From positions 124,001-188,000 of the IMG/VR virus record IMGVR_UViG_3300037010_002844: DNA of 64,000 nucleotides. One strand, 5' to 3'. Below the pieces are notes generated by a model. That model was not told the origin of the DNA, ran no database searches, and saw nothing but the letters and a program-made list of their open reading frames with translations. Within the stretch, counting starts at the first letter, position 1. Every line of letters starts with the position of its first letter. Of the stretch, positions 2,889-55,146 are shown piece by piece. The position numbers were made by a program, and so were the translations under genes.

Positions 2889-3149
2889 CTACCCTGTGGA
2901 GCCCGAAGTCGCGCTCTCACTGTTAACTACTTCCCTGTCTCCGGTGAGACCCCTGATCAGTTCGGCACACGCCTCTGGGTCGGCTACGACTTTCTCGGCA
3001 AATTCGTCCATCTGCGAAATCAGGTTGACGAACAACGGTTCCAACATCGCCTGGATCTTCTTGCGATCCTCTTCAGTGCCCGCGAGGATCGCTCGCCGAT
3101 AGAGAGGATCGTTGACTAGCAAGTCTCGAATTTGCTGCTTCGTGCGCAT
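2889..3149 (-). CDS. Hypothetical protein (86 aa)
   Basis: Fills the gap between tape measure and the next gene, with tight spacing. Confidence 0.7.
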   Translation of the reverse strand: MRTKQQIRDLLVNDPLYRRAILAGTEEDRKKIQAMLEPLFVNLISQMDEFAEKVVADPEACAELIRGLTGDREVVNSESATSGSTG

Positions 3150-3192
3150 GGCAATATCCTACTCCACAATTCCCACGATTATTCGTGGGTCA

Positions 3193-6100
3193 TCACTTGG
3201 CCGTCACGGGAGTATACGTGTAACCCGTTGCTGTATCGGGCAGTGTGGTCGAAGCAGTCTTGTCGGGCGAGCCCGTCGCAAAGTTGATGCGGTCCCTGAT
3301 GACCGAGTCCTTACGCAGGACGATCGCTTTCTCAACGTCAGAAGCACTCATCTCGATCTTGACGGTCATGTTGATGACGACGTCTTTCGCCTTGATCTCG
3401 TAATTGAACTTGCCGCCCAAACCCATGCCGTTGGCTAGCGTCTTCAACTTGGCGTCCAACTTCAAATCCGGGAGCTTGCCCAAGGCATCATTCAGACTCT
3501 GGGCCTTAGTGACCATGTCGTTGATTGCAATCAACGCGGTGCCGATGCCGTCCTTCGTCATGCTCTTGGAGATGGCCTCAAGGTCGCTACCACTCTTCAG
3601 AATGTCTGTGAAGTTGCCAAAGGCCTTCTTGAGGTTCTCGAGGGCTGCCTTCTGACCAGCGATCTTGCCGATGATCGGATCAGCCAGTGAATCGGAGATC
3701 AACTTCAGTGGGGCGTCGCCTTGTCCGACGCCGCTCTTGGTGATCTTCTCGAAGAACCAACCAATTTCATTCATGATGAGTGCCATCTTGAAACCAATGC
3801 CGGCGATCTGCGTGCCGCCCGACACCAGTGAGTTGACGTCCTTGATGACCTTCATGACATCATTAATGAGGCCGAACAGCAACTTTAGGCTATCGATTTC
3901 CGACTTCTGTCCTGCCAATGTCTTGATGATGGGCAATCCCAAGACGTAAGAAATCAGCTCCATCGGCGCGATGCCGGCGCCGACGCCGCTCTTGAAGATC
4001 TTCTCAAAGAACCAAGCAACTTCGTTGATGACTTCAGCCATGGCAAAGCCCTTGCCGTGGATGTCGCCGCCTTTGGCATCACCCGTCAATGACGTGATGA
4101 TGCCGGGAATCATACCTACGATGTCCATCAATGACTTGAAGACATCGATGCCTTGTTTCAAGGACTCGGGCTTGGTACCCTTCTGAAGATTTTCGATGCC
4201 CATTTTGAGGCTATCGAACAGGAAGGGCATCTTCTCGTTGATCGAGGTGAAGATCTTTGGAACGATGTCACCAATCTTGTCAATGAAAGTAACCACGTTG
4301 AGGTTGGGCACCTTGGCCTGTGCTAGTTGCGAGCTCTGCGCCGTGATCGCCTGGACCATGATGAACATCTGCTGCAACAGCGGGCCGATAAACTTCGTGG
4401 CAGCGGCGTCAGAATCACTAAAGTGCCAACTCGACATTGTCTGCAGCAGGGGTTCGATGGCACTGATGATAGCAGGAATCACCTTTGACAAACCGTCAGA
4501 AATTTGAGTAACGTAGGCACCCAGGGCCTGCATGTTTTCAGGCTTCAGGTTCTTGTCGTCACCGTGTGCAATGATGTTACCAGTGACATCCTTCAACGCC
4601 TCGATGGCGTTGGGTGAAGGTGACATGGCCTGTGCAATTGACACCACTGAACCCAGCAACTGACCCACAGCCGCCGAGGCCTTGAGTTGACTCTCGTTGA
4701 GTCCACCTTGCACGAGAGGCATGACCTTTTCGACGAAAACGTTAATCAGACGTTCAACGTTCTTTGCCGTGTCACCTGCGTACTGCGTCACCTTATCGAT
4801 GGCCTTGTGCACGTCCTCGCCGGTTGTCCACATGCTGTCGACGGACTCGAACAGCTTGTCAGGTGGCTTCATGGCGTTTGCCAGGCTGCCCATTGCGTTC
4901 AAGATCTCAGCAAATGCCTTGGCAGCCTCGAGCATCTCAGGGCCGCCAGAGACTAGAGCCTGCAACGTCTTGGTGATCGTCTCAATGATGCCGATGATGC
5001 CGGACCCGCCAGGTTGGCCGATCATCGCCTTCATCATCTCAGTGACGCTATGGATTCGCTCGACGGTGTCATCCTTGCCACTGAGCAACGTGATGAACGA
5101 CGGCTTGACGGCCTCCAAAATGGCAGCGATGTTCTTGCCAAAGTTGGTGATCGAGTCCATGATCTTGGTGAAGGCGTCGACCTTCTCCTTGAAGCCCTGG
5201 CCCATTGGCACCTCATTGAGCTTCTTCATGATCTCGATAGCGGCTTCACCCATGACAGCTACTGCCGCGACCAACGCTGTCATGCCAGCGGCCAACGCAA
5301 TCGCGCCGAGGCCCGATGTTGACATGATGATAGCACCGATGCCCATGGCAGCGAGGGTGACGAGGCTGACAGCCAGGAACACCTTCGACAGTTCCCACAA
5401 GACGTCGACGACATTCTTCATGCGATTGATGTCAACGCCCTTGAGAGCCAAATAGACGAGGCCCATAATGCCAACCATCGCAAGCAAAGCTAGACCCACC
5501 GCAAGCAGACCGCTGCCCGTGTTGGCATCAACATTGACCTTCGAGACGATCTTCAACGCAAGTGCTGCTGGAACCATAGCCAACGCAGCAAGGCCCACTG
5601 TCTTCAGGCCTTCGATCAATTCAGCGTCTTTGATGTTGAACTTACGAATGAGAATGATCGCGGCGAAGACGGCGACCATGCCGATGAGGATAACGCCGGC
5701 AACTGCCAACAAGAACGTTTTGACCTTGGCCCAGTTGATGCCAGTGCCACCTTTTTCAGCTGCCTGACCGGCCTTGATGATCTCTTCTGACTTGCCTGCG
5801 CTGGGTAGCGGTGAACCTGGGGCCTCAGGCGCTGACTTGACTGTGCCGGCTGCCTCCGCGATCTTCGGACCGAACTTCTTGAAGATAGCACCCGCACCTG
5901 CGATGAAGCCCTTACCCAGTGCGGTGGTCAATGCGGCCAGCGCGGCTCGCGTCAGTGCAGGTCCAAACAGCGTTCCCGCCAACATTGGAATGAACGGCTT
6001 GACGGCTGGTAGAACAGTGTTCTGGAGGAAGTTAAGGACCTTGCCACCCAATACTTTGAGCAGGTCCCAAATTGCAGGTGCTAGGACCTTCCACGCGTGC

Positions 6101-8235
6101 TTTAGGCCTTCCGCGATGGGTGCCAACAGGTCTCCCAGGAATCCCAAAGCGCCAGAGCCCCCGGGCACGCCCAACTCGACCTTGCCCGTGATGACGTCAG
6201 TGATCCAGACGATGACGTCCTTCATCTTGTCGGAGATCCACTTGATGGCCTCACCCAGCATCTTGCTAATCGTGAGGAAGAACTCCTTGAAGCCGTTGAG
6301 CACCCGCTTGCCAGCGCCCTCACTCTTGTTGAAGAAATCGAAGAACTTCTCTTTGAGGTTGTCCATCAACTTCGAGAACGAGTATTCGCCCTTGGTGAAG
6401 CCCTTGAAGAACTTGATCAGCTCATCAGTGATTCCATTGAACAGTGCGCCGAACTTCTTCGGACTGAAGAGCTCCGCGATTCCACCAAGAATATCCTTGA
6501 CGCCAGGGAAGGCCTCAACGAAGGCCTTCCCTAGCCTGACGCCAGCCTGTTCGACCAACAACATGCCACGTTTGATGTTCCAGATGATATCACGGAACTC
6601 CTTGGAGGCCTGAATGCCACCCAAGAACCCATGGAAGAATCTATCGAAGAAGCCCCCCTGCATGCTGGAGCCGCCTGCCATCACGATGCGCTCAATCGAG
6701 TCGGCCAACTTCTCCATGGCTTCGGCCTGGCTCAACTGCTTCTTCTCGGCCTGCTCGCTCTTCTTCTTGATGTCATCCAGGGACGCGCCTTGGTTCTTCA
6801 TCGAGAAGGCCATCTGCGCTGTCTTCTCATCGAGGCCCGTGGTCGAGGCCAACAACTTCTTCTGCTGACGATTGAATTGGGATGCATCAACACCGGCGGC
6901 AGCGAACTGCTTGCGGAGCATCTCGATCTGCGTCGCGGGATCCTGTGCCTCCATCAACTTGAAAGCATCGACGGAAATGCCAAAGGCTTGCGACAGCTTG
7001 GCAGCATTTTCAGCCGCTGAGTCGAACGTCTCGAAGGCATCAAGTATGCCGGTGATCTTGTCGAGCTCGAGGCCCAGCTTGCGGGCATAGACCGATGCTT
7101 GACCGATCTCCTTGACGGTGGCACCCGCAAAGTGCTTCACGTCGTTCATGGCCTTGACCATGTCCCGTGAGATGTGCTTCGAAGCAATGCCAAACTGCTT
7201 GCCCAGGTCCATCGCCTGCTTCTGGATGGGCATCAACTGGTCTGCCATCGTGGTACCAAAGATCTTGGCACGAGCGCCGATGGTTCCCATCATCTCGCCG
7301 CTGAGACCGAGGCCTTTCTGCCAGGCCAGCAAGGCACCACCATTATCGTGGAACTCCTGTGCGAAGTTCTCAAAGGTCGGGCCCATCTCCTGCGACAGCT
7401 TCAGGAATTCCTCGAGGCGGTGAGCCATGTCGCCGAAGACGCGCCAGGCTGACAGGCCCGTGTCAGAGAAACCCTTCAATTCTGTTGCCATCGCAAAGAT
7501 GGCCTTGGGCCCCGTCTGATCGAGGGCTCCAAACTCCTTACGAATGTTCTCGATGGCCTGTAGCAGCTCATTAGAGCCGCCCGCCGCATTGTTGGCGATG
7601 TCGACCAGGCCCTTGAACATCTTGAATGGAATCGCGATGATCGCGCCCGCGATGTTAACCAACGAATCGAGTAGGCCTCCCAAGAAGCCCATCAGGCCCT
7701 TGCCGATGGCCATGACGTTCTTGATGCCCTGTTTGAATCCCGAGATCGCGGCGGCCGAGATCGCCCAAGATGTTGGGAACTTCTTGGACAGGTAGTCGCC
7801 CAACTTCTGCAGCTGCTTGAGCAGCAACTTGGAGACCCCACCGGGCTCCTCGAGGGCCCTCAAGAAATCATCCATTTTCGTCTGGTTGACTCCCTGCGCG
7901 GCCTGTTGCGTTTCTTTCATGCGGCCAGTCAAGGCCTGAACGGAGGTCCCAGCAGTGGCCGCCTTCTTACCCAGTTCATCCAGGGTCGCCTGCTGCGTCT
8001 TGGACAGATCACCCATCTTGTCAATCAGGATCTTGAGACTCTGAGTGACCTGGTTCAGCTGGTTGACAGTCTCTCTGACATCGAGCGTGCCCATGGCCGC
8101 CGCGAGCTGCTTCATCGACTCAACCTGAGTCGCCTGAGCATCGTCGATCTTGTTAGACGCCGCGGCCATGCGGTCCATCAGGGCCGCCATCTTTGTCGCG
8201 ATGTCTAGTTGTTCTTTGTCAATAGGCCCTGCCAT
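3193..8235 (-). CDS. Tail tape measure protein (1680 aa)
   Basis: Very long Ala/Gly/Lys-rich helical protein with a central hydrophobic segment cluster, downstream of tube and chaperone genes. Confidence 0.88.
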   Translation of the reverse strand: MAGPIDKEQLDIATKMAALMDRMAAASNKIDDAQATQVESMKQLAAAMGTLDVRETVNQLNQVTQSLKILIDKMGDLSKTQQATLDELGKKAATAGTSVQALTGRMKETQQAAQGVNQTKMDDFLRALEEPGGVSKLLLKQLQKLGDYLSKKFPTSWAISAAAISGFKQGIKNVMAIGKGLMGFLGGLLDSLVNIAGAIIAIPFKMFKGLVDIANNAAGGSNELLQAIENIRKEFGALDQTGPKAIFAMATELKGFSDTGLSAWRVFGDMAHRLEEFLKLSQEMGPTFENFAQEFHDNGGALLAWQKGLGLSGEMMGTIGARAKIFGTTMADQLMPIQKQAMDLGKQFGIASKHISRDMVKAMNDVKHFAGATVKEIGQASVYARKLGLELDKITGILDAFETFDSAAENAAKLSQAFGISVDAFKLMEAQDPATQIEMLRKQFAAAGVDASQFNRQQKKLLASTTGLDEKTAQMAFSMKNQGASLDDIKKKSEQAEKKQLSQAEAMEKLADSIERIVMAGGSSMQGGFFDRFFHGFLGGIQASKEFRDIIWNIKRGMLLVEQAGVRLGKAFVEAFPGVKDILGGIAELFSPKKFGALFNGITDELIKFFKGFTKGEYSFSKLMDNLKEKFFDFFNKSEGAGKRVLNGFKEFFLTISKMLGEAIKWISDKMKDVIVWITDVITGKVELGVPGGSGALGFLGDLLAPIAEGLKHAWKVLAPAIWDLLKVLGGKVLNFLQNTVLPAVKPFIPMLAGTLFGPALTRAALAALTTALGKGFIAGAGAIFKKFGPKIAEAAGTVKSAPEAPGSPLPSAGKSEEIIKAGQAAEKGGTGINWAKVKTFLLAVAGVILIGMVAVFAAIILIRKFNIKDAELIEGLKTVGLAALAMVPAALALKIVSKVNVDANTGSGLLAVGLALLAMVGIMGLVYLALKGVDINRMKNVVDVLWELSKVFLAVSLVTLAAMGIGAIIMSTSGLGAIALAAGMTALVAAVAVMGEAAIEIMKKLNEVPMGQGFKEKVDAFTKIMDSITNFGKNIAAILEAVKPSFITLLSGKDDTVERIHSVTEMMKAMIGQPGGSGIIGIIETITKTLQALVSGGPEMLEAAKAFAEILNAMGSLANAMKPPDKLFESVDSMWTTGEDVHKAIDKVTQYAGDTAKNVERLINVFVEKVMPLVQGGLNESQLKASAAVGQLLGSVVSIAQAMSPSPNAIEALKDVTGNIIAHGDDKNLKPENMQALGAYVTQISDGLSKVIPAIISAIEPLLQTMSSWHFSDSDAAATKFIGPLLQQMFIMVQAITAQSSQLAQAKVPNLNVVTFIDKIGDIVPKIFTSINEKMPFLFDSLKMGIENLQKGTKPESLKQGIDVFKSLMDIVGMIPGIITSLTGDAKGGDIHGKGFAMAEVINEVAWFFEKIFKSGVGAGIAPMELISYVLGLPIIKTLAGQKSEIDSLKLLFGLINDVMKVIKDVNSLVSGGTQIAGIGFKMALIMNEIGWFFEKITKSGVGQGDAPLKLISDSLADPIIGKIAGQKAALENLKKAFGNFTDILKSGSDLEAISKSMTKDGIGTALIAINDMVTKAQSLNDALGKLPDLKLDAKLKTLANGMGLGGKFNYEIKAKDVVINMTVKIEMSASDVEKAIVLRKDSVIRDRINFATGSPDKTASTTLPDTATGYTYTPVTAK

Positions 8236-47073: not shown

Positions 47074-47721
47074 TTACCTCTTGTACGACAGGATGTCGTT
47101 TAGAACCCGGTCAATCCGGTCGCTGCGGTTGAAGATCCGCTTCAGCTCGCCATCGCTTAGCTGGCGACCTTCTGGAATCATGAAGGCACCAGGCGTTGAA
47201 GGCTCAGAAACGTAGTCCCAACAGATCAACTGAAAGTCATCCTGAACCACGTAGTAGTCGCCATCCTTCCGAGTTGACCCCACGCCCCGCGAGGAGATAC
47301 CCAACTTGACGTTGCTCTCGGCCAACGACTGCAGGATCTGACCCGAGGGGGTATTCAGGATCTCGACGGTTCCCATCACTGTTCCGTTCTCGAGGTAGGC
47401 CTCACGGACAATGTGGGAAACGTTCTTCAGGTTGATGACCGAGGAATCAGGGTGATCGAGCTCACCAAGAGCACGATTCTCAATGATGAACTTCTGGTAG
47501 TTCCTGACCTCGCGCTCCAACACACGGAGCGGATAGATTCGGCCGTTCTGGTTTAGGGTGTCTGCCTTCTGCAGGATTCCCTTCATCAGGATCTTCTTGA
47601 CAGCGGGCACCTTGACAGCGTTGCCCTGAGAATCTTCAGTAATGGTCTCAGGCTTGACGACCTCGGTGACCAGCTTGTAGTCAAAGATGTCGTAGGTATT
47701 CAGTAGCCTCTGGTTGCTCAT
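47074..47721 (-). CDS. Prohead core protease (T4 gp21-like)
   Basis: NQNGRIYP, ALGELDHP, VSH, TPSGQI, LGISSRGVGS, DYVSEPSTPGA. Confidence 0.95.
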   Translation of the reverse strand: MSNQRLLNTYDIFDYKLVTEVVKPETITEDSQGNAVKVPAVKKILMKGILQKADTLNQNGRIYPLRVLEREVRNYQKFIIENRALGELDHPDSSVINLKNVSHIVREAYLENGTVMGTVEILNTPSGQILQSLAESNVKLGISSRGVGSTRKDGDYYVVQDDFQLICWDYVSEPSTPGAFMIPEGRQLSDGELKRIFNRSDRIDRVLNDILSYKR

Positions 47722-47725
47722 GACA

Positions 47726-48580
47726 TCACTCCTCACCGTTTAGTTCGGTACTCAACTTGGTGTAAAGCATGAAGCGAGTCACTGTCTCATCATTGACCAC
47801 ATCGAGGGTCTCGGAGATCAGGCGCTCTCGGGCCTCGTTCAGCTTTTCATTGACGTACTTGTTAGCGTTTGCTGCAGTGTACTCGTCCATTCGTTGCAAC
47901 AGGTCAGACTTGATCTCTGCCAGTTTCTTGTGAATGACGGTCGGATCATCGTGAGCGGCCGAAAAGACATACGCCTTGACGAGTGACTTCTGATCATCGT
48001 TCAGGACACCAGCGTACTTCTCGTTCAACTTCTTTGTCATGACCTTCATCAACAGGCGAGCAGTTCCGTTAGACTCTTCACTGATGACATGATCATCAGC
48101 CTCTGGTCGTTCAGACACCAACCACTGGACCAACTGGTCCTCGTAGGTCGCCATCCTCGACAAGTCCTTGTCGGTCGATCGCCAATCATTGAGCAGCGTC
48201 TGCACGGTGGCATACATCCTGTACTCATTGATCTGTTGATCATAGAAGTTGTCATCTTTGATCGAGTAGTTGATGTGCTTGATGAGCAGCGACTTCTCGC
48301 GGTCCAGAGTCTGGATGTCGTGAGATCGGGCCGCCGAGCGCGCCTCGTTCAGGATGTTAGCAGCGACTGCCTCTGACGTCACCTTCGTCTTAATCAACGA
48401 ATTGACGAGCCTAAACTCTCGGTACAGCTCAGAACCAGGCTTGAAGTGCTTTCGGAGGATCTTCAACGCCACGGCAGACTTCTTCTGGTTGCCCTCGACG
48501 AGGGCGGTCGAAATGGTGCGGACAAGGAACTCGTAGAGTAGTCCAGCATTACGCTTCTTGTTGTGGCCCTTGCTGCTCAT
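47726..48580 (-). CDS. Helical head-assembly-region protein
   Basis: HNKKRNAGLLYEFL; lies between portal and protease. Confidence 0.7.
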   Translation of the reverse strand: MSSKGHNKKRNAGLLYEFLVRTISTALVEGNQKKSAVALKILRKHFKPGSELYREFRLVNSLIKTKVTSEAVAANILNEARSAARSHDIQTLDREKSLLIKHINYSIKDDNFYDQQINEYRMYATVQTLLNDWRSTDKDLSRMATYEDQLVQWLVSERPEADDHVISEESNGTARLLMKVMTKKLNEKYAGVLNDDQKSLVKAYVFSAAHDDPTVIHKKLAEIKSDLLQRMDEYTAANANKYVNEKLNEARERLISETLDVVNDETVTRFMLYTKLSTELNGEE

Positions 48581-51500
48581 GACTCGTCATCCTCGTTGTC
48601 ATCATCGATGATAAGTACATCGCCTTCGTTAATGGCGCTGCCTGTCAGACCCGGTTCGATCGACTCATCAATCTCGATGTTGATCTCTTGGTCCTCTTTT
48701 ATCAAACCATTCTTCGATCCGCGCTCACCAGGGAACTTCTTTTCCCAACTTAGCAACGCAGCGACCACGTCGCCAGGAAGCCGCTGCTGACGTGCGACGC
48801 TTTCGCCGAATGGGTCGCTGACGACAGACTTCAAGAAGTCGGTATCGTAAGGATCCTCCATCGCTCGATTGTCAGTCGAAGTCATCTTCCTGAAGTCAGG
48901 CATGTGCGTCTTAGACGGTCCGTGCGTCAAGTGACGGCTACGGTTGTAGAGCACGCGGTCAAGCTGCTTCTGAGCCTTGACTGGAATCTCGACGTCCTTC
49001 ATGGCGCCGACGCGGAGCCCAAATGTCTCATCGTCATCATTGTCGTCAGCTGACGTCAGGAGCTGAACACCAGGCGTGGTCTCCTCTTCTGGTTCCTCAC
49101 CTGCGTTTTCCTCGGGAGGCGTCTCTTCTCCGCCTGCGGGTTCCTCACCGCCTCCACCTTCATCGCCGCCGCCAAAGAGGTCTTCGCCTCCCCCGCCGCC
49201 ATCCCCTCCAGCACCCGCGCCGGACTCGATGGCTGCGTCAACGACCTTATCTTTCATGCGATTCTTGTCGATCTGCTTGCACTCCTGATCGTTGAGGCCC
49301 CAGATCTCCTTGCGGACAAAGTCCTTATCAATGAAGCCTTCAGGGGCCGAGCCGCCGATCTCAAACTTGGCACGCCACAGTTCTAGCTTCTGTTGCTGTG
49401 CGACAGTCGACGGGTTGGACAGATGCAACGTAAAGTTCTGCAGATCATCACCGTCATACCCGTGTGCATAGAGGTGGATGATCGCCAGCTTGTTGAGCTC
49501 GGCAAGGATCGTCTTCTGAATGACAGCAATGGTACGCGAGAACCTGATGTCCTCCTGCGCCAACGTGGCCTTGCTGCTAAGCATCTCATCGTAACCCAAG
49601 TAGGCGCGTGGGATCTTCAGAGCAGCAAACAGCTTCTTCTGAATGTAGGCCACGTCCTCGACGGCGGCAGTGTTCTGGCCTCCCGCGAGGGTTTCAATGC
49701 GAGTTCCAGACTCTTGGCCACGAACTGGGATGAAGTAGTCCTCATCGACGCTCTGAAACGCAAATATTAGTCCTACACCACCACCACCACCATGAGGTGA
49801 TTGTGCACCTTTCGCAGCATTTTCACCACCCACGGCAAGATTGTGCCATCGATCAACGGTAACACTGTACACATCTTCAGTTGTATCGATGAGCTCAACA
49901 GAAATGACGACGTGGTTGTTCGCACCGTCAGAAGCAACAACGCCGGTGTCAACGTTGTTGACGTACTGACGACCCAAGGCCGCAGGATGGTGCGCAGCCC
50001 AAACTGCCTTCCAGTTAAGGTAATCGGCGATGATGAACTTACCGACGACGTTTTTATGCAGCGATTTCGCGAGATCGTGAGCCAGATGAGCGTTCGTTGC
50101 TGCGTAGAGCTTCATGAACGTTACGTCGGACTTCAACCGTCTCAGGAACGCATCGAGCCCCTCGAACCTACGAAGCGATCTGATGACGTTGATAACGTAG
50201 ACCTGGCACTCAGGCGACCAAACATAGCGCATGTTCTGTCGGGCACGCTCCCTTCGTTCAGGGTCAGCCCACATCGTAGACATCGCTTCAGAACGTTTGA
50301 CGTAATGCTCAGCGTTCGTTATCAACTGCAGGTTGCCAGTTGAGTTGTTGAGCTTGTCAAAGTTGACGTGATGAATTGTCTTTCCCTGCTGTGAGATGTG
50401 CCCGTTCCGATAGACCTCGAGCCCGAACGCATGAGCCGCGATCAACTCGTGGGTAAAGATGCGTGTTCCGAACGATGGATCGAGCACCTTTTCGTAACAG
50501 TGCTTGTCAACTTCAGAAACTTCAGCGCCTGACATCGGTGCATATGTAACGTGCAACGGCATCAAGCTGTCGCCCGAACGTAGATCCTTCGCTTTAACGT
50601 GAGAACCATCACGAAGCATCATCCTATGTTCAGGTGTGACATTGATGACGCCGCCGTCGTCCAGCGTCACCCTGACAAACTGTTTCGTAGTACCTGACTT
50701 CCCGGCCCAGATCACCTTGCCGGGTACCAACCTACCCCCCGCTTCGAGATCAAGGGAATAAGTCTCATGGTCTCGGCGCCCTTCATTCCACTCCTTGACT
50801 AGCTCATCGATCCGCAGCATCCTACCATCCAACAATGGTATCTGAACGTTCGCTGCGAAGCACAGTGGATTGTACCTGAGGTCCACACGACCAGAAGAGC
50901 GATCAATGACCTGATTCGTCCTGAGGTTCTTCCTCTGCTCTTCAACATAAAGAGGCACGTCCTGCGCTGGAACGTTGGCAACGTCGATGTAGAAGACGCG
51001 GCGTTCAGGTGCCCTGACGACGCGGTACACCAACATTGCATCTTCGATGAGGATCAACTGACGCCAAATGCGGCGGGCAGGCTCAATGATCGATGACCCG
51101 TAAGGCAAGAACATGTCGTTGCCCAAGAGCCGAAAGTGAGTGATCTCCCAGTTCTCGAGGACTCGATTACCTAGGGTGACCCAGCGATACCTGACCGCAA
51201 ACGGATCGTCACGATCGTAGTTCTCTTCGCGCTCGATCTCGTTGACAGGGATCGGGAACGCTGAGACGACTCCGTACGTTGGAGAAACGTCATTATAGAG
51301 GAAGAAGTCGCCGTACTTAACAAGATTGCGCGCCCAGGATCGCAGGTTGAACTCGGTGTTCAACGTATTGTAGAAAAGGTCCTCGAGCACCTCGCGAATC
51401 TTCTCATTGTCCGAGTAAATGTGGAGGACGCGGCCTTTCTCATCCTGTGCACACGTTTCGTCGGCATAGATGTCAAGAGCAGCCGCGATCTCAGGAGTAT

Positions 51501-53088
51501 TGTGCGAGATCACACTATCGGTGGCAAAGTTCTTGTACCCGTCAACGGTGAGGTCGTAGAGAGGGATCTCACCGACATACTCAACGGAAACTACCTTACA
51601 GTTGTTGTAAGTCTCCTGAAAGTCACTAAACTTCTTGAAGCCATTCTGCGACAACCTGGAGATAATCGTGTTCTTGTTGGCGCCAAGCTTTTCGGCGAGA
51701 CGAGGCAACGTCACGCTGGGTGTATATGCATCACAGATCTGTTGGAACGTCAGTGAATTACCGTTCGAACCTCGTGGACGACCGCCCTTTCGGACGCTCT
51801 TAATCTGATTGACGGTCACTTCCTCGTCGTGATACCCCATTGTTGAACGCAACTCTGTCCACGACATCCGGGCGCGGCGGGCCAAAAACTTGTCAAGTAC
51901 GTTGACAGTGCAACCGAGCTTAATGCACAAAGAACGCTTCGTGTCACCAGCAGTCATCGAAGACTTCAATAGCTCGAGGCTCAAGTCCCGTGTCAGTAGA
52001 CCGGGTCGGTTGTTGATCATAGAATCAGCTTGACCGCCAGCATATGCCGCAACAAATTTATTGAACGTTGAGAATCCGTGGGTCGCCAATCGTTCATAGA
52101 TCAGGTTCCATGTGACATCAAGAGCATTTGCAATCGCCGGCATGCTGAAACCAACACGTTCAGCAGTCTCTAGGATTCGAGCAAAAGTCACATCCCTGCG
52201 AGCGCCAGGAGCATTGTCACGCATCCGAGCTGCATGGTTCTTCTTGAACTCTTCGATCCACTCACGGTTTTCGGGTGCCCACTTCACCCCGTTGTTGATC
52301 GCGGCGTGGTAACTGTCATGGGCAGACTTCGTCATGATCCTGAGATTTTCAGGACGATTATCAGTCTTAATGAAGTTGATGTGGTGGACAACCTCATCTT
52401 CGTTGAGCTGACGACCGGCAACCCACTCAGCGATCAGTTGGTGCTCTTTGGTCCAACCGCGGAACCTATCGTCCATCGTGTAGATCCACGAGTAGCCAAG
52501 GGTGCCTTCTTTGGCATCAGCAAAGATGTCTTTGCGGTAGAAGGGCATCATTGCATCGCCGGGTTTCAGGTCCTCAACACGACGGTATGTACCGTCACGA
52601 AGCATCAGTCGATGTTCCGGTGATGCAACAATCTCTTTTCCATTATCAAATTTGATCTTCCAGGCACTATCGACACAGGTCTGACGAGCCTGTTTACCGA
52701 ACGCCGGAACGATGCGCTTCAAATTGTGATCGTACGAATAGACAATGAAGATGTGATCCGGATTTTTCTCACACTCTTGCGCTAGCTCACCTATAGTCTT
52801 GAAACCATCTGAGGTTGCGATCTTAGTGTCAATCGCAAGTGAATACTCCATTTCTTGAAAGTCCTGATAGCGCATCAAGCGCTCGCTCAGGTTGTAGGCA
52901 TTTGCCGTGATGGTCGCGTAGGTCGGCGCCAGCGACTTCTGAAAGAGCAACGTGCCTGACGACTTAGTCTTGTCAGCGACCGCGATCGTCGTGTCGGCGG
53001 TGCGGATCTTCTTCTTGATGACAGGACCACTTCGAAACAGTCGCGTCAGTCGTCGGAAAAGGCTTTGAGGTGCTTCTTTTTTTGCCAT
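48577..53088 (-). CDS. Portal protein (T4 gp20-like) with two inteins; ~685 aa after splicing
   Basis: PEIAAALDIYADE, KYGDFF, LIEDAMLVYRVVRAPERRVFYIDV, EDYFIPVRG, KKLFAALKIP, QEDIRFSRTI. Confidence 0.95.
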   Translation of the reverse strand: MAKKEAPQSLFRRLTRLFRSGPVIKKKIRTADTTIAVADKTKSSGTLLFQKSLAPTYATITANAYNLSERLMRYQDFQEMEYSLAIDTKIATSDGFKTIGELAQECEKNPDHIFIVYSYDHNLKRIVPAFGKQARQTCVDSAWKIKFDNGKEIVASPEHRLMLRDGTYRRVEDLKPGDAMMPFYRKDIFADAKEGTLGYSWIYTMDDRFRGWTKEHQLIAEWVAGRQLNEDEVVHHINFIKTDNRPENLRIMTKSAHDSYHAAINNGVKWAPENREWIEEFKKNHAARMRDNAPGARRDVTFARILETAERVGFSMPAIANALDVTWNLIYERLATHGFSTFNKFVAAYAGGQADSMINNRPGLLTRDLSLELLKSSMTAGDTKRSLCIKLGCTVNVLDKFLARRARMSWTELRSTMGYHDEEVTVNQIKSVRKGGRPRGSNGNSLTFQQICDAYTPSVTLPRLAEKLGANKNTIISRLSQNGFKKFSDFQETYNNCKVVSVEYVGEIPLYDLTVDGYKNFATDSVISHNTPEIAAALDIYADETCAQDEKGRVLHIYSDNEKIREVLEDLFYNTLNTEFNLRSWARNLVKYGDFFLYNDVSPTYGVVSAFPIPVNEIEREENYDRDDPFAVRYRWVTLGNRVLENWEITHFRLLGNDMFLPYGSSIIEPARRIWRQLILIEDAMLVYRVVRAPERRVFYIDVANVPAQDVPLYVEEQRKNLRTNQVIDRSSGRVDLRYNPLCFAANVQIPLLDGRMLRIDELVKEWNEGRRDHETYSLDLEAGGRLVPGKVIWAGKSGTTKQFVRVTLDDGGVINVTPEHRMMLRDGSHVKAKDLRSGDSLMPLHVTYAPMSGAEVSEVDKHCYEKVLDPSFGTRIFTHELIAAHAFGLEVYRNGHISQQGKTIHHVNFDKLNNSTGNLQLITNAEHYVKRSEAMSTMWADPERRERARQNMRYVWSPECQVYVINVIRSLRRFEGLDAFLRRLKSDVTFMKLYAATNAHLAHDLAKSLHKNVVGKFIIADYLNWKAVWAAHHPAALGRQYVNNVDTGVVASDGANNHVVISVELIDTTEDVYSVTVDRWHNLAVGGENAAKGAQSPHGGGGGVGLIFAFQSVDEDYFIPVRGQESGTRIETLAGGQNTAAVEDVAYIQKKLFAALKIPRAYLGYDEMLSSKATLAQEDIRFSRTIAVIQKTILAELNKLAIIHLYAHGYDGDDLQNFTLHLSNPSTVAQQQKLELWRAKFEIGGSAPEGFIDKDFVRKEIWGLNDQECKQIDKNRMKDKVVDAAIESGAGAGGDGGGGGEDLFGGGDEGGGGEEPAGGEETPPEENAGEEPEEETTPGVQLLTSADDNDDDETFGLRVGAMKDVEIPVKAQKQLDRVLYNRSRHLTHGPSKTHMPDFRKMTSTDNRAMEDPYDTDFLKSVVSDPFGESVARQQRLPGDVVAALLSWEKKFPGERGSKNGLIKEDQEINIEIDESIEPGLTGSAINEGDVLIIDDDNEDDES
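49753..50862 (-). mobile_element. Intein 2 in portal (370 aa, HNH-containing, Cys1...Phe-Gln/Ser+1)
   Basis: YNPL|CFAANVQIPLLDG, block B VTPEHRMM, IHHVNFDKLNN, VYSVTVDRWHNL..IFAFQ|SVDEDYF. Confidence 0.88.
51499..52842 (-). mobile_element. Intein 1 in portal (448 aa, HNH-containing, Ser1...His-Asn/Thr+1)
   Basis: EMEY|SLAIDTKI, ASPEHRLM, VHHINFIKTDNRPENL, LYDLTVDGYKNF..SHN|TPEI. Confidence 0.92.
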
Positions 53089-53517: not shown

Positions 53518-55146
53518 TCACCGTAGCAACCAGCTAAAATCGCTCACGTCAGCATTCTTGATCTGCGATGGATCGCGGGGCTTGTGAACGTTGTAAGGAT
53601 TAACGCCCCTGATGTTAGGATTGATCAGCGGCTGTGCTGACTGAATGTCACCTGGCATCTGCGCTGAGTCCCTGCGCGCGACCTGCGTGGCCTTCAACAT
53701 GGCCATCGCCATCTCATGAGCCTGTTCATTGACTCCTGAACCGCCGTTGGTCAGCCAAATGCCAATCGCTAGACTCATAATCAAGTCGTCATGACTGTCA
53801 CGGGTGGCCTGAGCCTTGGACCCCTGCCAGATGAAGGCCTGCATCTGATCGTAGAAGCGTTGCGAGTAGATTTTGACAATCTTGTTGCGGATGATCTCCT
53901 CGAGCTTCGCCAGGATCTGCGGACGAGTGTTACCTTGCGTCTCAAAGCCAGGAATTGCCTCTGGGTCGCTCGAGATGTACTCGAACATGTCGCCTGTCAT
54001 ATTGCGATAATACAGACGCTTGTAGCCGATGTCTCTGAGTCTGACAGCCGTCATGTAGCCAAAATTGTTACGCTCTGGGCACAGCAAGGCAGTGTTATAC
54101 TTCTTGCCGTAGTCAGCTAGAAGGTCGGCCAACTTGTCAGGCGGAATCTTGCCCATGTATTCTGCGACGACTTCACAATCATTTACGTCAATGACGTGCA
54201 TCGTCGAATAGTCGGCAGCGTCTCCACGGGCCACGTCAGATGAAATAACATACTTCTTGCCCGGCTCAGGATCAGACCAGATCCAGACAGCATTCTGCGG
54301 TCCTTCTTTGCGAATCGGACTGTCGATCATGCTCCTGAGATAGTCCATCTCCGTGGGTTGCAGGAATGTGTCACCTGACGAGATGAAGTCGCAAAGGAAC
54401 TCCTGGGCAACTTTTCGCTTTGGCAGGTTCTTGGTTTCCTTGTCAAACCATGCCTGATCGTGCTCGGGATGAACGTGCCATGGAAGATTGATAGTGTTGA
54501 ACTCATTGACCTGTGCTATTGCGTCGGTCCACAACTTGTAGTACATGCCGCCGACGCCGTTAGGCGTGGAAATAATGATCGCAGAACCGCCCGTGGAGAT
54601 AGTCGGATAGAGACCGGTCCAGATCTCTTCAAAGTCTCTGATGAATGCGGCCTCATCGACGATGAGAAGTGACAAGGCCTCCGAACGACCAGCGTCTGGT
54701 GAGGTCGGTACGGCCGCGATGACTGACCCATTGGCAAACGTGATCTGTTGCTTGGTCGATTCGAACTTGGTGAGGAGCAACCACTTGGGCAGGCCGTCAA
54801 GGATTGTCTTCACCTTCTTGATGAAGTTCATGGCGGTCTGCAACTTGGTAGCGATGACCAGGACGTTCTTGTCCTTCTTGAAGATCGCGTACCAGACGGC
54901 GTAGGCCGCGGTGACGGTTGACAGGCCCAGCTGACGTGACTTCAGGACGATGTTGAAGCGATTCTCTTCAAATGCCTTGATGCAGTCATCCTGAAAGTAG
55001 TAGGTGTCGAACGGGATCAGGCCCCTCTTGGGGTGCTGGATCTTCGCATAGTTCTTCATGAAGTAGACGGCGTTTTTGCCGCACTTCAGAATCTCGCGGA
55101 CCTGTTCTTCTCTACCGAGCGGACCGTTGGACGTGGCAATTGACAT
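53518..55146 (-). CDS. terL: Terminase large subunit (T4 gp17-like)
   Basis: LKSRQLGLST Walker A, LLIVDEAAF Walker B, ISTPNG, DVARG and HDDLIMSLA nuclease motifs. Confidence 0.96.
   Translation of the reverse strand: MSIATSNGPLGREEQVREILKCGKNAVYFMKNYAKIQHPKRGLIPFDTYYFQDDCIKAFEENRFNIVLKSRQLGLSTVTAAYAVWYAIFKKDKNVLVIATKLQTAMNFIKKVKTILDGLPKWLLLTKFESTKQQITFANGSVIAAVPTSPDAGRSEALSLLIVDEAAFIRDFEEIWTGLYPTISTGGSAIIISTPNGVGGMYYKLWTDAIAQVNEFNTINLPWHVHPEHDQAWFDKETKNLPKRKVAQEFLCDFISSGDTFLQPTEMDYLRSMIDSPIRKEGPQNAVWIWSDPEPGKKYVISSDVARGDAADYSTMHVIDVNDCEVVAEYMGKIPPDKLADLLADYGKKYNTALLCPERNNFGYMTAVRLRDIGYKRLYYRNMTGDMFEYISSDPEAIPGFETQGNTRPQILAKLEEIIRNKIVKIYSQRFYDQMQAFIWQGSKAQATRDSHDDLIMSLAIGIWLTNGGSGVNEQAHEMAMAMLKATQVARRDSAQMPGDIQSAQPLINPNIRGVNPYNVHKPRDPSQIKNADVSDFSWLLR

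What the first reader, a model, noticed from the sequence alone, without database searches (positions are those of the whole stretch)
49753..50862. Atypical portal intein ending in Phe-Gln, with a Gly-rich insertion before the splice junction
Seen: removing CFAAN...IFAFQ restores YNPL-SVDEDYF portal sequence. The C-terminal residue is Gln instead of Asn, the penultimate His is replaced by Phe, and GGENAAKGAQSPHGGGGGVG separates blocks F and G. Known: Gln-ending inteins are rare. Inference: the portal is essential, so it should splice, possibly slowly or conditionally, which could gate head assembly.
Basis: partly seen in the sequence, partly recalled or inferred. Interest (0 to 1): 0.6.

Follow-up and report, generated by a model that had tools for sequence, protein, structure and literature searches.

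The report
Portal intein ending in Phe-Gln
The single portal gene of this 309 kb phage carries a real self-splicing protein insert that ends in Phe-Gln instead of the usual His-Asn, and about a dozen diverged relatives share that ending, so it is a working variant of a known kind and not an error or a wreck.

Summary
Window 49753-50862 (minus strand) encodes a 370-aa class 1 intein (Cys1, block B T-P-E-H, HNH nuclease core, block F, block G G-L-I-F-A-F-Q, Ser+1). It sits in the only T4-type portal gene of a 309 kb phage genome.

- **Junction:** it is exact. Relatives with an empty site read RYNPL|S(I/Q)DEDYF, and T4 gp20 has the same spacing. The site matches gp20 328|Ser329, in the clip domain.
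- **Phe-Gln end:** this is a conserved trait. Twelve Cys1 inteins at this site, 45-56% identical to the window's intein, form one strongly supported clade, and all end in [Phe/Trp]-Gln|Ser. Both Gln codons and both Ser codon families are used. A thirteenth Phe-Gln end lies in the sister clade. About 33 inteins at five other sites of the same portals all end in Asn.
- **Insertion:** it is only partly special. All 29 inteins at this site carry a long block F-G loop (19-42 residues after the block F motif, against the usual 9). The window adds about 9 more, including a (GGT)5 repeat that is modelled as disordered.

Splicing by Gln cyclisation has precedent (PolII and CIV RNR inteins). The idea that splicing gates head assembly is untested. 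Reads could not be checked.

The parts
48577..53088 (-). Portal gene (T4 gp20 type), 1503 codons plus stop. It carries two inteins and is the only portal gene in the 309 kb genome.
   Evidence: ORF. Pfam Portal_T4 1.5e-61. Single locus in the genome, with the profile match split at positions 255/250.
49753..50862 (-). Intein 2 (the finding): 370 aa, residues 743-1112, from Cys1 to Phe-Gln.
   Evidence: Junction fixed by empty-site alleles. The AlphaFold2 model has mean pLDDT 81, and the listed Foldseek PDB hits are inteins plus a few related bacterial intein-like and Hedgehog autoprocessing (Hint-fold) domains.
50860..50862 (-). Cys1 (TGC), the N-terminal splice nucleophile (block A).
   Evidence: Invariant in the 11-sequence alignment A2. 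NCBIfam intein_Nterm scores 40.3 bits against a cut-off of 24.5.
50626..50637 (-). Block B, T-P-E-H (Thr B:7 and His B:10).
   Evidence: T81 and H84 are invariant in A2. Column read-out.
50305..50406 (-). HNH nuclease core (HHVN...N...EH). Directly after it, a conserved segment present in all full-length relatives is missing.
   Evidence: Pfam HNH_3 scores 26.8 bits against a cut-off of 24.8. Gap in P0001 at columns 201-264 of alignment A1.
49831..49872 (-). Block F, VYSVTVDRWHNLAV. Position F:4 is Ser (Asn in the other clade members) and the block F His is present.
49774..49830 (-). F-G spacer GGENAAKGAQSPHGGGGGV, which includes (GGT)5 at 49777-49791.
   Evidence: pLDDT is below 50 for model residues 355-366.
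49753..49773 (-). Block G, GLIFAFQ. The last beta-strand is IFAF, G:6 is Phe and G:7 is Gln (CAG).
   Evidence: Strand at model residues 371-374. Codons. [F/W]Q in all 12 clade members.
49750..49752 (-). Ser+1 (AGC), the C-extein nucleophile. It corresponds to Ser329 of T4 gp20.
51499..52842 (-). Intein 1: 448 aa, residues 83-530, from Ser1 to Ser-His-Asn|Thr, with an HNH domain. It is canonical at its C-terminus and serves as an internal control.
50863..51498 (-). Middle extein (residues 531-742).
   Evidence: tblastn hits to phage portals. Alignment to T4 gp20.
48580..49752 (-). C-extein (residues 1113-1503).
   Evidence: Alignment to T4 gp20 from residue 329.

Best explanation
This is a functional class 1 intein with an HNH-type homing endonuclease remnant. 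It is inserted in the clip domain of the phage's only portal protein and is removed after translation.

Inferred mechanism:
1. Cys1 makes the thioester, helped by block B Thr and His.
2. Ser+1 takes over the N-extein.
3. The terminal Gln cyclises to an aminoglutarimide, taking the place of the usual Asn-to-succinimide step. The helper is probably the block F His, because the usual penultimate His is replaced by Phe.
4. The ester then rearranges to a peptide bond, giving ...RYNPL-SVDEDYF...

The aromatic-Gln ending is an adapted, selected state shared by a clade of portal inteins. It is not a recent defect. The long loop between blocks F and G is a lineage trait. Its Gly-rich extra piece here most likely arose by triplet slippage in a tolerant, disordered loop and has no specific role. 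The homing endonuclease of this copy has probably lost function.

What is shown: anatomy, junction, conservation and phylogeny. What is inferred: the chemistry, the splicing rate and the state of the endonuclease.
For: - **Identity and fold:** Pfam Intein_splicing and HNH_3 and NCBIfam intein_Nterm. The AlphaFold2 model places IFAF as the closing strand, and its PDB neighbours are inteins.
- **Exact junction:** empty-site alleles and T4 gp20 spacing.
- **Need to splice:** the genome (estimated 91% complete) has one portal gene. The site lies in the gp20 clip domain, residues 279-358, which binds the terminase and the neck (PMC4493910).
- **Selection on the splicing residues:** C1, T and H of block B, Q and S+1 are invariant in 11 sequences that are 45-56% identical to the window's intein.
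- **Clade:** the 12 Cys1...[F/W]Q inteins form a clade with 99/99 support, on a tree built without the last 8 residues.
- **Codons:** Gln is CAG or CAA and Ser+1 is AGC or TCG.
- **Internal control:** about 33 distinct inteins at five other sites of the same portals all end in Asn.
- **Second origin:** a second Phe-Gln end lies in the sister clade, next to Leu-Asn relatives.
- **Loop:** there are 19-42 residues after the block F motif in all 29 site-mates, and 28 here. The basic 10-residue loop is modelled with confidence in relative P0006 (pLDDT about 83), while the extension here is below 50.
- **Precedent:** Gln-ending inteins splice, and about 5% of working inteins lack His G:6 (PMC4031507). 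The Pab PolII intein combines Gln G:7 with Ser F:4, as here (PMC8175363).
Against: No experiment or proteomic data show the spliced portal. The chemistry is taken from other inteins that are not close relatives. The profile match to the Pab PolII intein is only 2.7e-4 and covers the N-terminal blocks alone. Model coordinates could not be inspected, so the position of the block F His relative to Gln is unknown. That His is not strictly conserved in the clade: it is shifted by one position in P0005 and P0017 and absent in L007b. Raw reads were not available.
Confidence: 0.8

Rival explanations
1. The Phe-Gln end and the Gly-rich loop make splicing slow or conditional, so that portal maturation, and with it head assembly or terminase docking, is timed by the intein.
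For: The Pab and Mma PolII inteins are slow with their native Gln (PMC4031507). The site lies in the clip domain, so an unspliced insert would block the terminase and neck interface (PMC4493910). The portal carries two inteins.
Against: No sensor feature was found: Cys1 has Ser at +1, so no Cys1/Cys+1 disulfide trap is possible. The Gly-rich part is not conserved even in the nearest relative, P0005. The CIV RNR intein splices better with Gln than with Asn (PMC4031507). Clade-wide fixation of aromatic-Gln fits an optimised site as well as a timer. Many relatives carry 3-5 inteins of ordinary His-Asn type in the same gene, so inteins in this gene are explained by homing alone.
Confidence: 0.12
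2. The intein is decayed and no longer splices. The insert is either kept as an extra domain or the gene is dead.
For: The canonical C-terminal dyad is absent. The curated C-terminal model does not match. The endonuclease part carries a deletion.
Against: It is the only portal gene. The 1503-codon frame is intact. All splice-site residues are invariant across a diverged clade, with synonymous codon changes. A 370-aa insert in the ring-forming clip domain is hard to reconcile with a dodecameric portal.
Confidence: 0.05
3. Sequence or boundary artefact. Either the true end is canonical, or the junction is at the other Gln-Ser pair (GAQ|SPH), which would leave 16 extra residues in the portal.
For: The spacer holds a (GGT)5 repeat, which is prone to slippage, and a second Gln-Ser dipeptide.
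Against: The identical protein is on 6 contigs, and the one whose DNA was fetched differs by 1 base in 4512. Twelve other inteins at this site end in [F/W]Q|S, and none of them has the inner Gln-Ser. Empty-site alleles and T4 gp20 fix the spacing. IFAF is modelled as the closing strand of the fold.
Confidence: 0.03

Closest known systems
PolII (DP2) inteins of Pyrococcus abyssi and P. horikoshii, and of Methanoculleus marisnigri
   Same: These are class 1 inteins with Cys1 and a native C-terminal Gln that is cyclised. The Pab intein also has Ser at block F position 4, as here (PMC8175363, PMC4031507).
   Different: They keep the penultimate His, have Cys at +1, are archaeal mini-inteins without an HNH domain, and have no long F-G loop. 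Sequence relation is weak: 2lcj scores E 2.7e-4 over the N-terminal blocks only.
Ribonucleotide reductase intein of Chilo iridescent virus (CIV RNR)
   Same: It is a viral intein whose native C-terminal Gln works better than Asn (PMC4031507, citing Amitai et al. 2004). It is the best precedent for an adapted Gln end.
   Different: The host protein and lineage differ. Its penultimate residue and loop could not be checked because the paper is not held.
Inteins that lack the penultimate His (about 5% of working inteins; Chen, Benner and Perler 2000, cited in PMC4031507)
   Same: G:6 is not His, yet splicing goes on. In some of these inteins, putting His back impairs splicing.
   Different: As far as the review describes them, they end in Asn. 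Here the loss of His is combined with Gln and a conserved aromatic residue.
HNH-containing phage inteins (in-frame HNH homing endonuclease; Dalgaard et al. 1997, cited in bioRxiv 10.1101/2025.01.02.630785)
   Same: An in-frame HNH nuclease sits between the splicing blocks of an intein in a phage structural or replication gene.
   Different: This copy lacks a conserved segment after the HNH core. The family is specific to T4-type portals of large phages.
Class 3 inteins (no N-terminal nucleophile, Cys at block F position 4)
   Same: The sister clade at the same portal site has Pro1 and Cys F:4.
   Different: The window's intein has Cys1 and Ser F:4, so it is class 1. The sister clade also lacks the Trp B:12 and Thr G:5 of the class 3 signature. 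That signature is recalled from the literature and was not tested beyond the column read-out.

Membership tests
Intein, class 1 | Hint-fold splicing domain | tested here: met
   Pfam PF14890 at 1.5e-13. AlphaFold2 model with pLDDT 81. The 47 Foldseek PDB matches at E<=0.001 are led by inteins; the rest listed are bacterial intein-like and Hedgehog autoprocessing (Hint-fold) domains.
Intein, class 1 | Cys or Ser at position 1, and block B Thr-x-x-His | tested here: met
   Cys1 and T-P-E-H are present and invariant in the clade. TIGR01445 scores 40.3 bits against a cut-off of 24.5.
Intein, class 1 | Cys, Ser or Thr as the first C-extein residue | tested here: met
   Ser+1 (AGC) is invariant, with both Ser codon families used among relatives.
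Intein, class 1 | In-frame insert at a conserved site, with intein-free alleles that close up exactly | tested here: met
   P0022, P0035 and P0036 have empty sites. Mel-JY01, immuto and T4 gp20 have the same spacing.
Intein, class 1 | C-terminal His-Asn (block G positions 6 and 7) | tested here: not met
   The end is Phe-Gln. TIGR01443 intein_Cterm gives no hit, although it does hit intein 1. Both deviations are known, tolerated variants (PMC4031507), so this does not exclude membership.
Intein, class 1 | Demonstrated excision and extein ligation | not testable with these tools
   This needs expression or proteomics.
Gln-terminated inteins (PolII and CIV RNR type) | Native C-terminal Gln directly before the +1 nucleophile | tested here: met
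   Gln1112|Ser1113. The Gln is conserved in 13 inteins at this site.
Gln-terminated inteins (PolII and CIV RNR type) | Common descent with the described Gln-ending inteins | tested here: not met
   There is only a weak N-terminal block match to 2lcj. On the tree, the nearest relatives are Asn-ending inteins of the same portal site. The Gln end therefore arose independently here.
Class 3 intein | No nucleophile at position 1, and Cys at block F position 4 | tested here: not met
   Cys1 is present and F:4 is Ser.
HNH homing endonuclease | HNH (beta-beta-alpha-metal) core motif | tested here: met
   PF13392 scores 26.8 bits against a cut-off of 24.8, at residues 153-186 of the intein.
HNH homing endonuclease | Complete nuclease and DNA-binding module, as in relatives | tested here: inconclusive
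   A conserved segment (A1 columns 201-264, about 46-50 residues in close relatives) is missing only in the window's copy. Activity was not tested.
Bacterial intein-like (BIL) domain | Lacks the +1 nucleophile, and cleaves instead of splicing | tested here: not met
   Ser+1 is present and conserved, and the insert interrupts an essential conserved protein.

The most novel reading that the evidence does not exclude
Aromatic-Gln is a co-adapted block G that defines a distinct catalytic solution for C-terminal cleavage: glutarimide formation without the penultimate His. It arose at least twice at this one portal site, each time with Phe at G:6 next to Gln. Together with the long F-G loop, it may set the tempo of portal clip maturation in large phages.
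Probability: 0.2. Interest if true: 0.6.

Novelty: new variant of a known kind. Interest (0 to 1): 0.4.

Why it matters
C-terminal Gln inteins and inteins without the penultimate His are each known, but only from a few scattered cases. It is still unclear how Gln cyclisation is catalysed and why it is sometimes slow. This portal site offers a natural comparison set. It holds a dozen diverged [Phe/Trp]-Gln inteins, a probable second origin of Phe-Gln, and Asn-ending relatives (His-, Lys-, Leu- and Arg-Asn), all in the same extein context. Mini-inteins of 153-177 aa are among them. That makes the roles of G:6 and G:7 directly testable by swaps. In practice, annotation pipelines that rely on the His-Asn C-terminal model will misplace the end of these inteins, and so the mature portal sequence. 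For phage biology, it shows that the portal of this group of large T4-type phages is a hot spot for inteins, with at least six insertion sites and up to five inteins in one gene.

Tried and rejected
**Steps that failed or were not possible**
Identical protein on 6 contigs stands in for it.
- The search for related loci with the broad alignment A1 failed because it had no conserved stretch. The narrower A2 gave two loci.
- The original papers on Gln-ending inteins and on inteins without the penultimate His are not held. Their content is cited only through the review PMC4031507.
- Literature searches for T4-type portal inteins or aromatic-Gln ends found no description of this family. The library is partial, so this is weak evidence of novelty.
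- The big representative search and the metagenome scan were not used, because the word search already gave enough relatives.
The exteins were searched piece by piece, by reference.
- The search for homologous proteins only saw proteins of about 830-2630 aa, so intein-free or single mini-intein portals are under-sampled there. Intein-free portals came from the phage tblastn.

**Ideas considered and rejected**
- Alternative junction at the inner Gln-Ser (GAQ|SPH): relatives lack it and the spacing fixes the outer one.
- A junction shifted by one residue (Leu as first residue, Gln as +1): no nucleophiles would be in place.
- Class 3 mechanism: Cys1 is present and F:4 is Ser.
- The antisense ORF at 49801-50343 (+, 180 aa) inside the intein is taken as a chance frame within a well-supported coding region. 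It was not tested further.

Full report
**1. What is in the sequence**

The window is bases 124001-188000 of a 309,433-base virus record, estimated 91% complete. On the minus strand, 48577-53088 is one open frame of 1503 codons. It lies between a large terminase subunit gene (53518-55146) and a head maturation protease gene (47074-47736).

Pfam finds a T4-type portal (Portal_T4, 1.5e-61) broken into pieces, two intein splicing domains and two HNH nuclease motifs. The genome has no second portal gene. The portal profile is matched in two parts that meet at profile positions 250-255, exactly at the finding.

- Intein 1 is residues 83-530 (window 51499-52842): Ser1 ... Ser-His-Asn|Thr.
- Intein 2, the finding, is residues 743-1112 (window 49753-50862): Cys1 ... 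Phe-Ala-Phe-Gln|Ser.

**2. The junction is exact**

Three related portals have the site empty: RYNPL|SIDEDYF in P0022, and KYNPL|SQDEDFF and KFNPL|SQDDDFF in P0035 and P0036. The intein-free portals of Microcystis phage Mel-JY01 and Flavobacterium phage immuto have the same five residues between the conserved Asn and the E-D-aromatic-aromatic motif.

The exteins were searched separately, by reference. The middle extein aligns to T4 gp20 up to residue 322, and the C-extein aligns from Ser329 on. Six unaligned residues lie between these on both sides. [quoted passage not shown] This domain protrudes from the capsid and binds the terminase and the neck (PMC4493910).

Two other junctions were considered. 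One is the inner Gln-Ser of the spacer. The other is a shift by one residue. Both are excluded by this spacing, by the need for nucleophiles at position 1 and at +1, and by the relatives. I did not build or search a joined extein sequence.

**3. The atypical end is real and conserved**

The codons are TTT CAG | AGC. The curated NCBIfam model of the intein C-terminal region finds intein 1 (18.9 bits, cut-off 15.6) but gives nothing for intein 2, even at E up to 10. The N-terminal model finds both. The Pfam match to intein 2 ends at profile position 147 of 155, in block F.

A word-based search with the intein region found 45 proteins, and one scan of viral contigs added two loci. Among inteins at this same site, 13 of 29 distinct ones end in Gln: 11 in Phe-Gln and 2 in Trp-Gln.

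On a maximum-likelihood tree built without the last eight residues, the 12 Cys1...[F/W]Q inteins form one clade with 99/99 support. The window's nearest relative is P0005. The members aligned in A2 are 45-56% identical to the window's intein, with paths of about 0.9-1.2 changes per site. Even so, Cys1, the block B Thr and His, the Gln and Ser+1 never change.

Where DNA was fetched, Gln is CAG in three and CAA in three, and Ser+1 is AGC in two and TCG in four. This is the signature of selection on the residues.

As an internal control, about 33 distinct inteins at five other insertion sites of these same portals all end in Asn: His-Asn about 20, Ser-Asn 8, and single cases of Gly-, Ala-, Lys- and Glu-Asn (counted by eye from the printed junctions).

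The identical 1503-aa protein occurs on six contigs. A 7 kb contig from a JGI metagenome differs from the window by one base in 4512. Raw reads could not be examined.

**4. A probable second origin**

The sister clade at the same site (100/99 support) has Pro at position 1, Ala in place of the block B Thr, and Cys at block F position 4. It ends in Leu-Asn or Lys-Asn. The exception is the intein of locus L008, which ends in Phe-Gln and groups (99/96) with a Leu-Asn intein.

The tree needs at least two changes of the end residue. In both cases Gln comes with an aromatic residue before it, which hints that the two positions are coupled. Exchange of the short block G between co-infecting phages cannot be excluded as an alternative.

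**5. The Gly-rich insertion**

Count the residues from just after the block F motif (His-Asn-Leu/Phe) to the end of the intein. Ordinary inteins in these proteins have 9; examples are intein 1 and the His-Asn inteins at sites a, c0 and c1. All 29 inteins at this site have 19-42. Eight of the twelve members of the Gln clade have 19, P0005 has 24 and the window has 28.

So a longer F-G loop, by about 10 residues, is a lineage trait. It also appears in related inteins at sites b and e. The window adds about 9 more residues of its own, including five GGT codons in a row (49777-49791). That pattern points to triplet slippage.

In the AlphaFold2 model of the window's intein (mean pLDDT 81), the strands NLAVG and IFAF pair up as in other inteins. 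Residues 355-366, inside the spacer, fall below pLDDT 50. In the model of relative P0006 (mean 84), the basic loop is modelled with confidence, about 83.

**6. How it most likely works**

This part is inferred from the established intein mechanism (PMC4031507):
1. An N-S acyl shift at Cys1, helped by Thr B:7 and His B:10.
2. Transfer of the N-extein to Ser+1.
3. Cyclisation of Gln to an aminoglutarimide, which frees the intein.
4. An O-N shift that closes the portal backbone.

Because G:6 is not His, the block F His is the likely helper. In the Pab PolII intein, that His lies 4 A from the terminal Gln, and position F:4 is Ser, as here (PMC8175363). What the conserved aromatic residue does is unknown. 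A packing role that positions the longer Gln side chain is my guess.

Published cases go both ways on speed. Pab and Mma PolII are slow with Gln, while CIV RNR is better with Gln than with Asn (PMC4031507). Clade-wide fixation suggests the second situation.

**7. The gating idea**

Nothing found here supports regulated splicing. There is no Cys at +1 for a disulfide trap. The Gly-rich piece is not conserved. Relatives carry up to five inteins of ordinary type in the same gene, so the presence of inteins is explained by homing. The idea is not excluded either, and kinetics would decide it.

**8. State of the mobile element**

All full-length relatives have a well-conserved segment after the HNH core (alignment A1 columns 201-264). 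The window's intein alone lacks it. The nuclease is probably inactive, so this copy is likely fixed and kept only by the need to splice.

**9. Novelty**

Gln-ending inteins and inteins without the penultimate His are known. I found no description of a conserved aromatic-Gln block G with a long F-G loop, or of this portal intein family, in the library. That library is incomplete. I rate it a new variant of a known kind, of moderate interest.

Noticed in passing
window 51499-52842 (-): A second intein (448 aa, with HNH) sits in the same portal, between ...QEMEY and TPEIAAAL. It starts with Ser, not Cys, and ends in canonical Ser-His-Asn|Thr. Relatives at this site start with Ser (P0006, P0011, P0032) or Cys (P0008, P0022, L008).
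   Followed up: partly
window about 50305 (-), after the HNH core of intein 2: The window's intein lacks a conserved segment (about 46-50 residues in close relatives, alignment A1 columns 201-264) that every full-length relative has. The homing endonuclease is probably decayed.
   Followed up: partly
L007:1-6747 (IMG/VR UViG 3300010379_000183): This portal gene has at least five inteins. Two lie back to back at the finding's site...RYNPM|C...LLHN|CFQG...SFQ|SVEEDFF. The Cys1 of the Gln-ending intein thus serves as the +1 residue of the His-Asn intein in front of it.
   Followed up: partly
L008:1024-5655, and proteins P0015, P0016, P0023-P0034: The sister inteins at the same site have Pro at position 1, Ala in place of the block B Thr, and Cys at block F position 4. 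They look like class 3, but have Tyr or Phe at B:12 and Leu at G:5. One of them (L008) ends in Phe-Gln after a 42-residue tail. They may be a separate lineage of inteins that lack an N-terminal nucleophile.
   Followed up: partly
relatives of the portal (P0005-P0038, L003, L007, L008): This T4-type portal is an intein hot spot. Six insertion sites were seen: after ...MEY, before CKYGD, after LPYG(K/S), after W.QL, the finding's site, and before SKATLAQ. One gene can hold one to five inteins.
   Followed up: partly
own genome outside the window: G000:C1:76.4-79.1 kb, 85.9-86.3 kb and 110.8-111.1 kb: There are seven further Intein_splicing matches in other genes of the phage (ten in the genome, three of them in the portal). 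One match, at 85888-86253, has 3 TGA and 1 TAG stops inside it, and another has 1 TGA. The cause could be a broken intein, an intron or something else. It was not examined.
   Followed up: no
window 49075-49221 (-): The C-terminal part of the portal has a Gly- and Glu-rich low-complexity stretch (residues 1290-1338). A similar one is present in the portals of L007 and L008.
   Followed up: no
L003 (LR756508.1, 484 kb uncultured phage), 3030-7190: This portal has three inteins at sites other than the finding's. The third (HNH type, ending Leu-Lys-Asn|Ser) is the one that matched the window's intein in the phage collection. The gene upstream (1167-2948) also holds an intein.
   Followed up: no
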